17,869 nucleotides of DNA, taken from IMG/VR virus record IMGVR_UViG_3300005977_000075, positions 1-17,869 of that record. One strand, written 5' to 3'. The position numbers were made by a program, and so were the translations under genes. Shown in pieces: positions 996 to 11,878 of the stretch. Positions within the stretch are counted from its first letter, which is position 1. Each line of letters starts with the position of its first letter. Below the pieces are notes generated by a model, which was not told the DNA's origin, made no database searches, and worked only from the letters and a program-made list of their open reading frames with translations.

Positions 996-1898
996 CTACA
1001 ACATTATCTTGAAACTATGTAGGCGTAGTAAAGGACTAAATAGCAAACTATGTAATAGTGGGTGTCTTAGCCTTCTGACATATCTTGTCCCGTGGTTTTG
1101 GTTTTCATACTCAACAACAAAGTGGTTAAAACCTACGTTATGCTCTGTGTCGGACTTATACAACTGGATTGCCTCGTCCCTACGATTGTCCCTTAGAAGC
1201 AGTAATATTACAGCGATCTTAATTACGCCGAAATTGTAGAGTTTTGCGAACTTATCAATTTTACTAATATATCCATATCTTTCAAGAAGATCGAAGGCAT
1301 ATTGCTGTATAAGCTGTCTACGCATTTGTATTTCTGCTTTAGATACATCAAGCTCATTATTGAGAATATAATTCAAGTTGGCTAACGCATCAGATAGTTT
1401 TTGCCTTGCAGTTGTCTCTTCTTCTTCTATGAAGTTAGGTATAAGCTGTATTACGTCATTAAAATCAACAGAGCAGTATCGAATTGCGAATGCACCAAGT
1501 ATATAGAATTTATGTCTAAGTTTCCTATGAAAGATTTTTTGTACTATCCCCATGAAGACAGCTTTTTGTACTGAATTATTAATTAATGCAGATAGTCTGT
1601 GTGCAAAGACGTAGTATTTTAGCCTCCTGTTGTCGAACTTTGAAGGGATTGTACCAATCCCATAGTTAGGTAAAAGAGTGTAATGGCGTTCGTAATGAGA
1701 ATAGATCTTCTTATTGTCTTTAGATAATTTATGAATCCCTTCTGTATTGCTAAAAAACCTCTCATCATCATATTGTATAACTTCTCCAGTTTCGGCACAC
1801 ACGACGTATATGCCGTGTGTGACAAACTCCTTGCACTCTACAGTTTGGTCTGGAGTTTGGTTGAGAACGGTTTGGTTGAGAACAATTGATTCTGTCAT
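996..1898 (-). CDS. Diverged transcription factor B (TFB/TFIIB)-like protein
   Basis: 300 aa, close to TFB length. N-terminal VVCAETGEVI resembles the atypical Sulfolobales TFB1 ribbon (YICSETGEVL, from memory). LLPNYGIGT resembles the reader/linker (IHDRGLST), ILNNELDVS the inter-repeat segment (LLRELDVS), and LLLLRDNRR the second cyclin repeat (LLHDERR). These occur in the same order as in TFB. Confidence 0.65.
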   Translation of the reverse strand: MTESIVLNQTVLNQTPDQTVECKEFVTHGIYVVCAETGEVIQYDDERFFSNTEGIHKLSKDNKKIYSHYERHYTLLPNYGIGTIPSKFDNRRLKYYVFAHRLSALINNSVQKAVFMGIVQKIFHRKLRHKFYILGAFAIRYCSVDFNDVIQLIPNFIEEEETTARQKLSDALANLNYILNNELDVSKAEIQMRRQLIQQYAFDLLERYGYISKIDKFAKLYNFGVIKIAVILLLLRDNRRDEAIQLYKSDTEHNVGFNHFVVEYENQNHGTRYVRRLRHPLLHSLLFSPLLRLHSFKIML

Positions 1899-1913: not shown

Positions 1914-2448
1914 CAAACAGCTGTTTAAATATATTTAGCATCATGAAACACGTGAGTATCCTAGACCGGCTCCTAACATGAGGGTTTTGAGAAAGAGTTG
2001 AGGGCGACTTAATGTACTCTGTTCGAAAAACGATTTTACCTTTGGGTTAAAAGTGGATAACGAGATATGGATAGTAGTAATCTGCGTATACGTTTTTGGA
2101 TAGTATAACATCGCCGACGTGATGATTAGGTATTGTGACCACGATCCTGTTCCAGTCCCTGAACTCTTCGAAAGCTATCTCGTTATTGCGTTGAACTATC
2201 GCTATCGTCGGCAGAGAGTGGAGGTCGGCGTGTCGTATATTACCCTTAATAAATATCTTGTTTCCTTCGACCTCATAATCGATATTATACTTCTTCAAAA
2301 GATCGATTACCTCTTGTTGCATTTTTTTGCTCTGGTTATTTTCGTCCCAGAATTCTTGTGCCATTTTTATCCGTTTAATATTCTCAAACAGCTGTTTAAA
2401 TATATTTAGGATCGTGAAACGCATATATCACGTAGTATCCCCCCGGCT
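1914..2448 (-). promoter_or_regulatory. Duplicated promoter block (1914-1968 and 2385-2448) upstream of the TFB-like gene and the 105-aa gene
   Basis: On +, both read CAAACAGCTGTTTAAATATATTTAG-N-ATC-N-TGAAAC...CACGT(G)AGTATCC...CCGGCT. Confidence 0.85.
2047..2364 (-). CDS. Hypothetical protein, 105 aa (start revised to ATG 2364, MAQEFWDE...)
   Basis: The longer ORF start (2424) runs through the promoter. The ATG at 2364 lies about 30 nt downstream of TTTAAA, in a promoter duplicated with that of the TFB-like gene. Confidence 0.75.
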   Translation of the reverse strand: MAQEFWDENNQSKKMQQEVIDLLKKYNIDYEVEGNKIFIKGNIRHADLHSLPTIAIVQRNNEIAFEEFRDWNRIVVTIPNHHVGDVILSKNVYADYYYPYLVIHF

Positions 2449-3902: not shown

Positions 3903-4454
3903 ATGAATAAATCAACACCTAATAATAAACTTTTCGGTGAACCTCCTTTTAGGTCTAAAAAAATAGAAAAAATATTTGAGGAGTTATCAAAGGGAGGAAA
4001 GCTAGCACGAGAGCTTGCGGAATTGATCAATGTGCCTTCCAAGCAAATCTATCCCAGGGTCAAGAGGTATATCGAAAAAGGCTGGATCTGTGTGAAAAAG
4101 ATAAACAACATTAACATTTATTACTTGTCAGAAACTGCTAAGAAAATATTCGAGTTACAGAGTAGTAGTTTTGAGAAGGTTAAGGAGAAGGCAGAACATT
4201 TAATGGGAAGAAAATTGGACGAAGATGAATTAGAAATTCTAAAGTTCTTCTATGAACTAAATGGCAGTTATGTAGAAAGGAATGAAAACGAATCCATAGC
4301 AGAACAGGTTTACTACGCACTGAAACTGAAGAGGATAATACTCTCTAGGGTAACTGAAATACTCACTGAATTTACTAAAGCTAAGGTACTTTTTGCATAT
4401 AGGTTAAGAAATGGTGTAATTCTGAAGGTAAGACTGAATAAGAATCTTCTCTAA
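3903..4454 (+). CDS. Winged helix-turn-helix DNA-binding protein (possibly two wHTH domains)
   Basis: N-terminal KIFEELSKGGKLARELAELINVPSKQIYPRVKRYIEKGWICVKKINNINIYYLSE is a typical ArsR/TrmB-like wHTH. The C-half (ESIAEQVYYALKL...VTEILTEFTKAKVLFAYR) suggests a second wHTH. Confidence 0.85.
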   Translation: MNKSTPNNKLFGEPPFRSKKIEKIFEELSKGGKLARELAELINVPSKQIYPRVKRYIEKGWICVKKINNINIYYLSETAKKIFELQSSSFEKVKEKAEHLMGRKLDEDELEILKFFYELNGSYVERNENESIAEQVYYALKLKRIILSRVTEILTEFTKAKVLFAYRLRNGVILKVRLNKNLL

Positions 4455-9274: not shown

Positions 9275-10181
9275 TTATATAAAATTAAATGATACCGACC
9301 CAGAAAAGGCACTCTTGAGAGTAGATTACAATACACTGTTACCTATGTTCGAAAAATACTACACACAGGTGTATGATGCTAATGTGAAGTTCATCGATTT
9401 CCCCTACATGGAGAAACAGTACATTGAATTATCTAGAAAATATTACATGGAAGGTATTGCCGATTTAACGGTTCTCATGATGCATACAATATACCAGATC
9501 ACGATAGACAGAAAGGAACACAAGTTCGAAAAAATAAGACCTGTCCCGATTGACACCGGTCAGACGACGATCGTTAGCGGGGAGTCCAGGGGAGGGAAAT
9601 CCTCATTGGCGTTGTGGCTTGCGTACGCGTTATATGGCGATTGGGACGTCGCTATCGCACACATTATCATCGATCCGTTGCAACTCGACGACCTAATTGA
9701 GGGAATGAAAACATACGGGATAAACAAGATCCCGATGATAATTATTGATGATGCCGGTATAGGTTTCGGAAAACAGGTAGGGAAGATGGACAGACTTAGA
9801 CTAGAAAAGATACATAAATATGCACAGACATGGGCAATAAAGTTCAGTAACGTGTTGATGACTATACCGTCGGAAACTAGGCTTTCTGGTGTATTGATGA
9901 AAGCCATGCCATCGTCGTATGCTATTACAATAAAACCATTGACAATGATGACGTCTGAGGCTCACGTATACAAGAACGTTGTCAACATCACAGGAAAGTT
10001 ACTGAAGACTAAACATACACTTAGGGATTACAACAGTGTTAACGTTGGGCTTATCTTAAAGAACGAGCTAAAAAACAAGTATTCGCATATAGTGTATACA
10101 CCAAGGCTAATGCCAGACGAAGCTTACGTGAAATATAAGCAACTCAGAGAAGACTATCTATACATTATCGCGAAGATGTGA
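9258..10181 (+). CDS. P-loop ATPase (possible viral packaging/morphogenesis ATPase)
   Basis: Walker A TIVSGESRGGKS and Walker B MIIIDDAG; GGTGGA SD before the TTG start. The specific role is inferred. Confidence 0.88.
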   Translation: MSLVNDYIKLNDTDPEKALLRVDYNTLLPMFEKYYTQVYDANVKFIDFPYMEKQYIELSRKYYMEGIADLTVLMMHTIYQITIDRKEHKFEKIRPVPIDTGQTTIVSGESRGGKSSLALWLAYALYGDWDVAIAHIIIDPLQLDDLIEGMKTYGINKIPMIIIDDAGIGFGKQVGKMDRLRLEKIHKYAQTWAIKFSNVLMTIPSETRLSGVLMKAMPSSYAITIKPLTMMTSEAHVYKNVVNITGKLLKTKHTLRDYNSVNVGLILKNELKNKYSHIVYTPRLMPDEAYVKYKQLREDYLYIIAKM

Positions 10182-11147
10182 ACCTTTTTTTACAGAGGGG
10201 ATTGAGGAGGAACTCAACCTACTTATTATTTCTCTTCTTCTCAGCGGGAACTCTGTAGCAATTGCAGTTAGGATGCCGTAAACTATTCCAGTTACCCCAA
10301 AAAGTTCCTGGAAGAGCAAAGTCCACAGATAAACCCCGTAACTCACCTCGCCTAAGAAGACCGTTACACGACTAAGTACCCTGGGTGGCTCCACGATAAG
10401 GAGGGCGAAAGCGGGTAACGCCAAATTGTAAATCAAGAACCTTGTGAAGAACTCATATACAAATTCATTAGAGGAAAATACAAATGTAATAAGAACATAT
10501 TGAGCGTAAAGTATTAGTATGAAATATTTGGCTTTTTTGGCTGGTTCACCTTTCTGTTTCTTCTTCAAAAGGTAAGCAATTATTCCCCACCCGTATGCCC
10601 CTAACCACAAGGGTGGCATGAAGTAAAGTAAGTGGAACTCGTCGTAAGGAAGGAAGACGATAAAGAGACTGTAGAAGAACGATATAAATACCAATAAAAC
10701 AGCTGTTTGAAACTTTGCTTTATCGCTCACTCCATGAATGACGGGGATAGCTAAGTACATCCATTCCTCCAGCTGGAGAGACCAGAAGAGATATTGAAAG
10801 GAAAACGGTGCAAAAACGAAGGAAACAAACGCAAAATGGAGTATCAAGTCGTAATACGTCACGCCCATATGGAACACGTATCTGTCGGCTAAGAATACAG
10901 TGACTACGGCAAGGAAGTAGAGTGGCCATATCCTCCTCACCCTTCTCGTGAAGTAACGAGCTAGTGAGGGGTTTTCGTCGAGTCTGTTCAGAAGGAGAAA
11001 AATCGATAGCTCGAAAAATAGGGGAACACCCAACCAACCAGGACGGAAAAATGTGAGAGGGACTAGTTGAAGAGTCCACAGATGATATAAAGCTACAGAA
11101 AAAGCAGAGAAAAAACGTAGCTGGGCTATTCTAGGGTCATACTCCAT
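10158..11147 (-). CDS. Acyltransferase family 3 (OafA/YrhL-like membrane O-acyltransferase)
   Basis: RIAQLRFFSAFSVALYH, GWLGVPLFFELS, YFTRRVRRIWPLY, FWSLQLEEWMY and FLGEVSYGVYLW match the AT3 motif series; about 10 TM segments. Confidence 0.92.
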   Translation of the reverse strand: MEYDPRIAQLRFFSAFSVALYHLWTLQLVPLTFFRPGWLGVPLFFELSIFLLLNRLDENPSLARYFTRRVRRIWPLYFLAVVTVFLADRYVFHMGVTYYDLILHFAFVSFVFAPFSFQYLFWSLQLEEWMYLAIPVIHGVSDKAKFQTAVLLVFISFFYSLFIVFLPYDEFHLLYFMPPLWLGAYGWGIIAYLLKKKQKGEPAKKAKYFILILYAQYVLITFVFSSNEFVYEFFTRFLIYNLALPAFALLIVEPPRVLSRVTVFLGEVSYGVYLWTLLFQELFGVTGIVYGILTAIATEFPLRRREIISRLSSSSIPSVKKGSHLRDNV

Positions 11148-11878
11148 TTTAGTCGCCTGGCATATATCATGCCGATCTTCTTGTTTCCTTTAATTGTAAC
11201 GTTAAACCCTGATGCTCTAAGCAGATCTGCAAGATGTTGAACGCCGTTATGATATTCTATGATAATTGTGTGATATCTACTAATCAAACGTGGTGGAACA
11301 GCACCAAAGAAATCGTATTCACACCCTTCACAATCGACTTTAAGTACAGACTCATAAGGAATATTATATTTCAGCGTTATAATATCTAAATTATTCGAAA
11401 GTCCACACTCACAACGAATCGGCTCAACGACGTCTTTTACATTGTTTTCCCTTATGTTCTTCTCTAAGTACCACACATTAACGTCAAACGCATAGACTTT
11501 CTTTGCACCGTTCAAGACAAAATAAATTGGCGAATCGCCTATCCCCGCACCGACATCAACTACTGTCCTTCCTTTTACATCAACATCATATGCACCGTCT
11601 CTGAAAATTTCCCCGAGAGCCACGAAACTATTTGTATCGAAATAGAACTTTAGTATCCTGTCCCTGTATCTAACTTGTATAAATCTATCATCAACATAAA
11701 TTACGTCAAGATCGCGTAACGTTGTAAAGAAATAAGCGTGCCATTTCGACTTTATTTCTACTTCCAACCCGTTCCTTAAGTTAGCTGTGAAAGGGAACTT
11801 GTTTAATGCTGTCTTAAACATGACATTTAACGGATTATGATATGCGGACATATACGCCTTAAACGTTTTGAAATCCAT
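11126..11878 (-). CDS. FkbM-family SAM-dependent methyltransferase
   Basis: VVDVGAGIGDS (motif I), KVYAFD, LKVDCEGCEY, IIIEYH. Confidence 0.92.
   Translation of the reverse strand: MDFKTFKAYMSAYHNPLNVMFKTALNKFPFTANLRNGLEVEIKSKWHAYFFTTLRDLDVIYVDDRFIQVRYRDRILKFYFDTNSFVALGEIFRDGAYDVDVKGRTVVDVGAGIGDSPIYFVLNGAKKVYAFDVNVWYLEKNIRENNVKDVVEPIRCECGLSNNLDIITLKYNIPYESVLKVDCEGCEYDFFGAVPPRLISRYHTIIIEYHNGVQHLADLLRASGFNVTIKGNKKIGMIYARRLKWSMTLE

What the first reader, a model, noticed from the sequence alone, without database searches (positions are those of the whole stretch)
996..1898. Virus-encoded, diverged TFB (TFIIB) homologue
Seen: a 300-aa protein with collinear resemblance to Sulfolobales TFB1 (CAETGEVI ribbon, YGIGT linker, NELDVS, LLRDNRR). 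The PEWRAF B-reader motif and the C-terminal BRE-reading HTH are not recognisable. Established: TFB recruits archaeal RNAP through its ribbon and reads the BRE through the C-terminal HTH; the truncated paralogue TFB3 acts as an activator. Inference: the virus may carry its own basal initiation factor that redirects host RNAP to viral promoters (a sigma-swap analogue), or a decoy that blocks the RNAP dock or TBP. Its own promoter has the AAACAGCTGTTT site overlapping the TATA box, which suggests a regulated cascade.
Basis: partly seen in the sequence, partly recalled or inferred. Interest (0 to 1): 0.82.

Follow-up and report, generated by a model that had tools for sequence, protein, structure and literature searches.

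The report
Viral protein with TFB-like N-terminus
A conserved protein of Sulfolobus monocaudavirus-like hot-spring viruses probably starts with a diverged copy of the part of the host initiation factor TFB that grips RNA polymerase, but the rest of the protein could not be shown to be TFB-like, so it may be a polymerase-docking factor and is not a proven viral TFB.

Summary
The 300-aa ORF is real, lies on the minus strand (996-1898), and has about 60 homologues, all in SMV1-4-like viruses and hot-spring metagenomes and all annotated as hypothetical.

Only the N-terminal part resembles TFB above chance. Residues 29-88 align with the ribbon and linker of crenarchaeal TFB (hhalign E 4e-5, probability 70%, score 34.0 against at most 20.9 in 120 shuffles). 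The family shares the non-canonical two-cysteine C-x-E-T-G-E-V ribbon of Sulfolobales TFB1 and a G-x-x-T linker motif at matching spacing. The GPEWR B-reader is absent.

The 9-10-helix core gave no Pfam TFIIB hit in any of 41 members, no profile signal (best E 0.018) and no internal repeat. NELDVS and LLRDNRR are not above chance. Foldseek put TFIIB first among non-self matches in two libraries, but never significantly (E at least 0.66, TM at most 0.39). A small beta-rich basic domain replaces the BRE-reading helix-turn-helix.

The AAACAGCTGTTT site next to the TATA box is confirmed and conserved at -28 in 27 of 37 relatives.

Most likely this is a TFB1-derived RNA-polymerase-docking module fused to a family-specific body. 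A canonical viral TFB is already annotated in rudivirus ARV2 (gp35).

The parts
996..1898 (-). ORF of 300 aa. It belongs to a family of about 60 proteins found only in SMV1-4-like viruses and hot-spring metagenomes (SMV1a gp39, SMV4 gp54; PHROG 19561, function unknown).
1770..1835 (-). Residues 22-43: a ribbon-like three-stranded beta element. C22 and C34 are invariant and the knuckle reads C-A-[ED]-T-G-E-V. This matches the non-canonical two-Cys ribbon of Sulfolobales/Desulfurococcales TFB.
1629..1769 (-). Residues 44-90: a low-confidence linker with no GPEWR B-reader. It contains the invariant LLPN-x-G-I-G-T-I-P motif (res 75-85, bases 1644-1676). That motif aligns with TFB's H-D-x-G-L-S-T-x-I-D at similar spacing from the ribbon Cys (46 vs 44 residues).
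1155..1628 (-). Residues 91-248: an all-helical core of 9-10 helices (pLDDT 88 when modelled alone). A cyclin fold was not demonstrated.
999..1136 (-). Residues 255-300: a small basic beta-beta-alpha-beta domain (pLDDT >90). It sits where TFB has its BRE-reading recognition helix. No match to any known fold.
1915..1926 (.). Palindrome AAACAGCTGTTT at -28..-17 from the ATG. It lies at -28 (+/-2) in 27 of 37 distinct upstream regions of family genes. The window holds 8 exact copies.
1924..1937 (-). A/T-rich TATA-like box (TAAATATATTTAAA on the gene strand). Its last three bases overlap the palindrome.
   Evidence: consensus of upstream regions; its role as a TATA box is inferred from position and composition
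2047..2397 (-). Neighbouring 105-aa gene (2047-2364) with a near-identical TATA-plus-palindrome promoter (palindrome at 2386-2397).

Best explanation
The gene encodes a protein specific to monocaudavirus-like viruses. Its first ~90 residues are a diverged copy of the RNA-polymerase-binding N-terminal module of the host's TFB1. That module consists of the non-canonical two-cysteine ribbon and a B-linker-like G-x-x-T segment, without the B-reader. It is joined to a family-specific helical body and a small basic C-terminal domain.

Inferred mechanism: the ribbon docks on the host RNA polymerase where TFB's ribbon docks. Because the B-reader and the BRE-reading helix-turn-helix are missing, the protein cannot simply replace TFB. 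It would either compete with TFB1 for the polymerase (repression or host shut-off) or act alongside TFB1, as the truncated paralogue TFB3 does, with the C-terminal parts supplying other contacts.

[quoted passage not shown] Many promoters of this virus share that palindrome.

Shown: homology-level similarity of the N-terminal module, absence of the B-reader and HTH motifs, and the conserved operator. Inferred: polymerase binding, competition or co-activation, and the identity of the operator-binding protein.
For: - The quoted ribbon motif really belongs to TFB. A DNA pattern for CxETGEV-x8-GPEW retrieved 33 loci, all TFB genes of Sulfolobales/Desulfurococcales/Thermoprotei. Their ribbons have two Cys only. 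PMC6101594 states that Sulfolobus TFB1 has this non-canonical two-Cys ribbon.
- In the viral family the same positions are invariant or nearly so: C22, C34, T37, G38, E39, V40.
- hhalign supports the N-terminal match: A1 vs A2 E 1.9e-4; A1 vs A5 gave 54 columns, viral 29-92 vs TFB 24-83, E 2.5e-4; A4 vs A5 gave E 4e-5, probability 70%, reversed control 0.3. The shuffled maximum was 20.9 against 34.0.
- An HMM of the viral N-terminus ranked all 33 TFBs within the top 39 of 1836 host ORF segments, and the top 17 were all TFB.
- AlphaFold predicts three short strands at residues 25-43.
- Foldseek's best non-self family is TFIIB in both PDB (5iy7_M at rank 1, plus 7zs9_M and 8wak_R) and BFVD (five giant-virus TFIIBs in the top 22).
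- The operator is conserved at -28.
Against: - Pfam Zn_Ribbon_TF and TFIIB match none of 41 members.
- The profile search of 1.84 billion proteins found no TFB.
- The hhalign probability is only 43-70%, and its E-values apply to a single chosen comparison.
- The heptad C-x-E-T-G-E-V also occurs in many unrelated phage proteins. The N-terminal profile weakly hits the Fur zinc knuckle.
- The first hairpin is 4-5 residues shorter than in TFB.
- The ribbon is modelled at pLDDT of only ~55.
- There is no experimental or co-folding evidence for polymerase binding.
Confidence: 0.5

Rival explanations
1. Whole-length diverged TFB paralogue. The 10 helices are two degenerate cyclin repeats that still bind TBP-DNA. 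The protein would then serve as a virus-specific initiation factor that redirects polymerase to viral promoters.
For: - Same length as TFB (300 vs 306 aa), with the ribbon at the same end and ten helices in the full model.
- TFIIB chains are the top non-self Foldseek family, aligned over 260-308 columns. The core-only model weakly hits cyclin H (TMq 0.38-0.39) and the TFIIB core 1vol_A.
- The best residual profile match is viral 166-188 to the first helix plus L-x-L-[PS] of a TFB cyclin repeat, E 0.018 against 0.3 for the reversed control.
- Bona fide TFB genes do occur on viral contigs, including ARV2 gp35.
Against: - No Foldseek hit has E below 0.66 or TM above 0.39.
- No Pfam TFIIB repeat was found in 41 members, although the divergent viral TFBs L170 and L178 do hit it at about 1e-9 to 1e-10.
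- The core HMM does not enrich TFBs.
- The helix mapping gave p=0.12.
- The viral core has no internal repeat, whereas the TFB core shows one at lag 94, r=0.49.
- The core is about 160 aa against about 200.
- The recognition helix is replaced by beta strands and the B-reader is absent.
Confidence: 0.2
2. No relationship to TFB. The N-terminus would be a generic degenerate zinc-ribbon or beta-hairpin knuckle that converged on the same short motif. The protein would do something unrelated to polymerase docking, for example act as a DNA-binding regulator, a replication factor or an anti-defence factor.
For: - The motif occurs in many unrelated phage proteins.
- There are weak hits to Fur, DksA/yteA-type and DUF2093 knuckles.
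- All curated libraries are negative.
- The family is an ORFan clade with no informative neighbours.
Against: - The match extends beyond the heptad to the G-x-Y-[IV]-C lead-in and to the G-x-x-T motif at equal spacing, in one posterior-supported alignment of 51-54 columns.
- The score lies far outside the shuffles.
- The shared state is the lineage-specific two-Cys variant of the host's own TFB1.
- TFIIB independently tops Foldseek in two libraries.
Confidence: 0.3

Closest known systems
Crenarchaeal TFB1 (TFIIB family) with the non-canonical two-cysteine ribbon
   Same: N-terminal position of the ribbon. Cys retained at the same two of the four ligand positions. C-x-E-T-G-E-V knuckle. G-[IL]-x-T linker motif about 45 residues downstream. 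Overall length of about 300 aa.
   Different: No GPEWR B-reader, no detectable TFIIB cyclin repeats, and no VTxRNRY recognition helix. The first hairpin is shorter. The C-terminus is a beta-rich basic domain.
Sulfolobales TFB3 (truncated TFB paralogue, DNA-damage activator; PMC6101594)
   Same: A TFB-derived ribbon joined to a non-TFB C-terminal part, with no BRE-reading HTH. It is a precedent for a ribbon protein acting alongside TFB1 rather than replacing it.
   Different: TFB3 keeps all four ribbon cysteines, needs them for function, and ends in a coiled coil. The viral protein has the TFB1-type two-Cys ribbon and a much larger helical body. Direct sequence comparison with TFB3 was not done.
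ARV2 gp35, 'Transcription initiation factor B' (Rudiviridae), and other TFB genes on IMG/VR contigs
   Same: TFB-related genes carried by viruses or proviruses of the same hosts. The contig-L178 protein also lacks GPEWR and has H-D-Y-G-I-G-G, close to the family's N-Y-G-I-G-T.
   Different: Those proteins are recognisable TFBs: Pfam TFIIB at about 1e-9 to 1e-10, Zn_Ribbon_TF at 1e-10 for ARV2 gp35 (above threshold) and 2.9e-4 for the L178 protein (below Pfam's cut-off). The SMV-type family is not. There is no synteny or other shared genes with the window.
ATV ORF145/RIP (PMC5123050)
   Same: The only characterised archaeal-virus protein that targets host RNA polymerase directly, and it comes from a related large spindle-shaped virus. 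It is a functional analogue if the present protein acts as a decoy.
   Different: There is no sequence relationship: tblastn against phage records found only SMV1-4/SMV1a. RIP binds inside the DNA channel, not at the dock.

Membership tests
TFB/TFIIB | N-terminal (zinc) ribbon homologous to Zn_Ribbon_TF | tested here: met
   Profile-profile match to TFB ribbons: E 4e-5, probability 70%, score 34.0 against a shuffled maximum of 20.9. Three strands are predicted. The two-Cys state matches TFB1. Caveats: Pfam PF08271 itself matches none of 41 members, and the heptad is not unique to TFB.
TFB/TFIIB | B-reader (GPEWR[AT]F) | tested here: not met
   G43 P44 E45 W46 R47 are invariant in TFB alignment A2. 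They are absent from all family members, where the region reads Y-D-x-E-x-F-F.
TFB/TFIIB | B-linker motif H-D-x-G-L-S-T-x-I | tested here: inconclusive
   The family's invariant G80 and T83 in L-P-N-x-G-I-G-T-I-P align to TFB G72 and T75 with high posterior confidence inside the N-terminal alignment. On its own, however, the linker gives E 0.45.
TFB/TFIIB | Two TFIIB cyclin repeats, detectable by sequence (PF00382) | tested here: not met
   No Pfam hit in 41 of 41 members at E up to 10. The hhalign core gave E 0.018 at best. The core HMM does not enrich TFBs. No internal repeat was found.
TFB/TFIIB | Two cyclin folds in the structure | tested here: inconclusive
   The models show 9-10 helices. 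In Foldseek, TFIIB and cyclin H are among the best hits, but with E of 0.66 or more and TM of 0.39 or less.
TFB/TFIIB | C-terminal helix-turn-helix that reads the BRE (V-T-x-R-N-R-Y) | tested here: not met
   The motif is invariant in TFBs and absent from the family. The model shows beta-beta-alpha-beta at residues 260-298 instead.
TFB/TFIIB | Binds TBP-DNA and recruits RNA polymerase | not testable with these tools
   This needs co-folding or biochemistry.
TFB3-type truncated TFB paralogues | Four-cysteine ribbon required for function | tested here: not met
   Only C22 and C34 are conserved. The requirement in TFB3 is described in PMC6101594.
TFB3-type truncated TFB paralogues | C-terminal coiled coil | not tested
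   No coiled-coil prediction was run. The model shows a compact helical bundle plus a beta domain.

The most novel reading that the evidence does not exclude
SMV-like viruses encode their own promoter-specificity factor. It would be a TFB1-derived protein that holds host RNA polymerase through the ribbon. Through its family-specific body and basic C-terminal domain, it would recognise the virus-wide AAACAGCTGTTT element placed just downstream of the TATA box, in place of BRE recognition. That would be an archaeal counterpart of a phage sigma swap, with the gene autoregulated from the same element.
Probability: 0.12. Interest if true: 0.85.

Novelty: new variant of a known kind. Interest (0 to 1): 0.55.

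Why it matters
Archaeal viruses are thought to rely on host TBP and TFB (PMC5569661). Only one viral protein, ATV RIP, is known to act directly on the archaeal RNA polymerase.

A conserved viral protein carrying TFB's polymerase-docking module but lacking its B-reader and its DNA-reading parts would be a natural dissection of TFB function. It would also be a candidate tool for probing the dock interaction. It could explain how chronic spindle-shaped viruses come to account for more than half of cellular transcripts (SMV1a, PMC12199143).

SMV1a and Saccharolobus islandicus REY15A are already a genetic system in which this can be tested.

Tried and rejected
**Database and profile searches that found nothing beyond the family**
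- Pfam, PHROGs and NCBIfam on the protein and on all 41 family members gave no informative family.
- PDB sequence searches with the protein, the full profile and the N-terminal profile found nothing, apart from weak Fur zinc-knuckle hits.
- The profile search of 1.84 billion representatives found only the family plus one 321-aa singleton, P0065. P0065 has no relatives of its own.

**Tests of the helical core against TFB**
- hhalign of the core against TFB cores gave no significant match.
- My own profile alignment with column and block shuffles showed signal only when the ribbon was included.
- The helix-by-helix mapping to BH1-BH5' gave p=0.12.
- Hydrophobicity cross-correlation and the internal-repeat test were negative.
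- Foldseek of a separately modelled core (res 88-250) gave no hit with E below 1.

**Literature and context leads**
- Searching papers for the palindrome gave nothing relevant. The aCcr1 box is a different motif.
- The family is not in the published anti-defence gene lists.
- The SMV1a transcriptome paper does not give the expression class of gp39 in the text, and its supplements are not held.
- The L178 TFB-like contig was checked as a possible evolutionary intermediate. It shares no synteny with the window.
- Neighbouring genes gave no functional context.

Full report
**What is there**

The window is the 17,869-bp contig IMGVR_UViG_3300005977_000075, also recorded as Ga0081474_138484. It is related to Sulfolobus monocaudaviruses SMV1-4, which the records place in Bicaudaviridae.

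The ORF at 996-1898 lies on the minus strand and encodes 300 aa. It has full-length homologues in SMV1, SMV1a (gp39), SMV2, SMV3 and SMV4 (gp54), all annotated as hypothetical. It also has about 60 homologues at 44-96% identity in hot-spring metagenomes, none carrying a precomputed Pfam domain. PHROG 19561, which it matches end to end, has no assigned function. It is clearly a real, conserved gene.

**Anatomy**

An AlphaFold model built from 41 sequences has mean pLDDT 73.6. It shows these parts:
- a conserved N-terminal peptide (M-T-E-S-I-V);
- three short strands at residues 25-43, at pLDDT of about 55;
- a low-confidence linker at residues 45-89;
- ten helices between residues 91 and 248;
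- a confident beta-beta-alpha-beta unit at residues 260-298.

The core modelled alone (residues 88-250) has pLDDT 87.9 and nine helices.

Across the family only two cysteines are invariant, C22 and C34. G38 and E39 are also invariant, and T37 and V40 are nearly so. The linker motif L-P-N-x-G-I-G-T-I-P carries invariant P77, G80, T83 and P85.

**Is the TFB resemblance real?**

I fetched real TFB genes with a degenerate DNA pattern for C-x-E-T-G-E-V, eight residues, then G-P-E-W. It returned 33 loci, all in Sulfolobales, Desulfurococcales or Thermoprotei genomes. Their ORFs are TFBs carrying Pfam TFIIB plus the TFIIB zinc-ribbon domain, named 'transcription initiation factor IIB' by their sources.

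Their ribbons have only two cysteines, and C-x-E-T-G-E-V is invariant. This agrees with the published statement that Sulfolobus TFB1 has a non-canonical two-cysteine ribbon whereas TFB3 keeps four (PMC6101594). The viral family shares that derived state.

Profile-profile comparison gave the following:
- Family against 27 TFBs: 13 columns, 69% identity, E 1.9e-4.
- Family against a more diverse set of 37 TFBs: 54 columns, viral 29-92 against TFB 24-83, E 2.5e-4.
- N-terminal sub-profile (residues 17-92) against the same set: 51 columns, E 4e-5, probability 70%. G-I-G-T aligned to TFB's invariant G-L-S-T with high posterior confidence.

Controls support the match. The reversed TFB profile gave E 0.3. 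120 column-shuffled TFB profiles scored at most 20.9 against 34.0. An HMM of the viral N-terminus placed all 33 TFBs within the top 39 of 1836 ORF segments from the host loci.

**Limits of that evidence**

- The E-values refer to one chosen comparison.
- Pfam's ribbon model matches none of the 41 members.
- A scan of IMG/VR for [IV]-C-x-E-T-G-E-V returned 77 loci. Only four were family members and two were true TFBs. Most of the rest were unrelated phage proteins with the motif in an internal or C-terminal position.
- The N-terminal profile weakly touches Fur zinc knuckles in the PDB.

The heptad alone therefore proves little. The case rests on the longer collinear alignment, the shared two-cysteine state and the N-terminal position.

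**The rest of the protein**

Nothing at the sequence level links the core to TFB:
- With the ribbon removed, hhalign gives E 0.018-0.037 at best. This is viral 165-188 against the first helix and L-x-L-[PS] of either cyclin repeat; reversed controls gave 0.1-0.3.
- My own profile alignment gave z of 5-8 with the ribbon and z of 1-2.9 without it.
- A helix-to-helix mapping test gave p=0.12.
- The best ungapped hydrophobicity register (+30) gave p=0.79. The TFB core shows its internal repeat at lag 94 (r=0.49), and the viral core shows none.
- The core HMM does not enrich TFBs.

NELDVS and LLRDNRR are therefore not above chance.

At the fold level no Foldseek hit is significant, yet TFIIB keeps appearing:
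- Full model against PDB: rank 1 is 5iy7_M, and 7zs9_M and 8wak_R also appear, at E 1.2-5.8.
- Full model against BFVD, after the family itself: five giant-virus TFIIBs in the top 22, at E 0.66-2.1.
- Core alone against PDB: cyclin H at TMq 0.38-0.39 and TFIIB core 1vol_A at 0.31, all at E above 5.

I read this as a shared gross architecture (ribbon, long linker, about ten helices) that neither proves nor excludes cyclin folds. The B-reader and the BRE-reading helix are definitely absent.

**Promoter**

On the gene strand the upstream region reads T-A-A-A-T-A-T-A-T-T-T followed directly by AAACAGCTGTTT, with the palindrome at -28..-17 from the ATG.

The window holds 8 exact copies of the palindrome. 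It holds 16 sites with up to two mismatches, against 1.4 expected. Several sit at comparable promoter positions. The next gene (2047-2364) has an almost identical promoter.

Among 37 distinct upstream regions of family genes, the palindrome lies at -28 (within two bases) in 27. An SMV2-like clade has a different element there.

A palindrome in this position suggests a dimeric repressor that blocks polymerase recruitment. That is inference from the usual mode of archaeal repressors (PMC5569661). The aCcr1 box is a different sequence.

**Interpretation**

Most likely (0.5) the protein carries a TFB1-derived polymerase-docking module on a family-specific body. It would act on host RNA polymerase as a competitor of TFB1 or as a TFB3-like partner.

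A whole-length degenerate TFB (0.2) and a chance or convergent ribbon with an unrelated function (0.3) remain open.

**Novelty**

Virus-borne TFB genes are not new. Rudivirus ARV2 gp35 is annotated 'Transcription initiation factor B' and is drawn as TFB in Baquero et al.. I found 21 IMG/VR contigs with canonical TFBs, plus a 254-aa TFB-like protein that lacks the B-reader.

The SMV-type family, however, is unannotated everywhere I looked and differs from all of these. I found no paper that discusses it.

Noticed in passing
window 711, 1915, 2386, 4941, 5714, 7119, 10697, 15613 (exact); 7480, 11917, 14028, 16489 (one mismatch): AAACAGCTGTTT is a virus-wide element. There are 8 exact copies, and 16 sites with up to two mismatches against 1.4 expected. 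Many copies directly follow an A/T-rich box upstream of genes. It is also frequent in related loci, including SMV1, SMV3 and SMV4. The protein that binds it is unknown, and I found no literature on it.
   Followed up: partly
window 2047-2397 (-): The 105-aa gene upstream of the target has a near-duplicate of the target's promoter: the same TATA-like box, the palindrome and similar flanks. The listed 125-aa ORF probably starts at its internal ATG (2364).
   Followed up: partly
L042, L080, L083-L086, L091, L093 upstream regions: In the SMV2-like clade the family gene's promoter keeps only the AAACAG half-site, followed by TCCCCGGCC. This suggests a changed operator.
   Followed up: no
L121:5125-5509 (SMV4, AVT99_gp51): SMV4 carries a second, partial and frameshifted copy of the family gene covering residues 172-300. 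Its last 92 residues are annotated as a separate gene.
   Followed up: partly
L170:9019-9867 (ARV2 gp35) and L178:11569-12333: ARV2 gp35 is a bona fide but divergent TFB in rudivirus ARV2, next to an amino-acid permease gene. The L178 ORF is a 254-aa TFB-like protein on an unrelated 38-kb IMG/VR contig. It lacks GPEWR and reads H-D-Y-G-I-G-G in the linker.
   Followed up: partly
L200-L220: 21 IMG/VR contigs of 7-144 kb encode TFBs, 20 of them canonical (37-49% identity to Sulfolobales TFB1); the other is ARV2 gp35 at 29%. Whether they are viruses, proviruses or misassigned host DNA was not examined.
   Followed up: no
L122-L197: Many unrelated phage proteins share an internal motif, [KR]-x-[VI]-[IVM]-C-x-E-T-G-E-V-F-x-S. 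This is a recurrent element of a large phage protein family that I did not identify.
   Followed up: no
window 1872-1898 (-), residues 1-9: The N-terminal peptide M-T-E-S-I-V-x-x-Q is nearly invariant across the family, although it precedes a variable, gappy stretch. I have no explanation for this.
   Followed up: no
L089, L102; P0064: Some metagenomic copies of the family gene are truncated to 48-99 aa, retaining only the region up to or just past the ribbon. They could be frameshifts, assembly errors or ribbon-only variants.
   Followed up: no
window 10158-11147 (-), 11126-11878 (-), 3903-4454 (+): An Acyl_transf_3 membrane acyltransferase (E 1e-19) and an adjacent methyltransferase-like gene are present, as in SMV1. 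The 183-aa ORF at 3903-4454 has a weak TrmB-type winged-helix hit (E 0.0015), which makes it a candidate DNA-binding regulator.
   Followed up: partly
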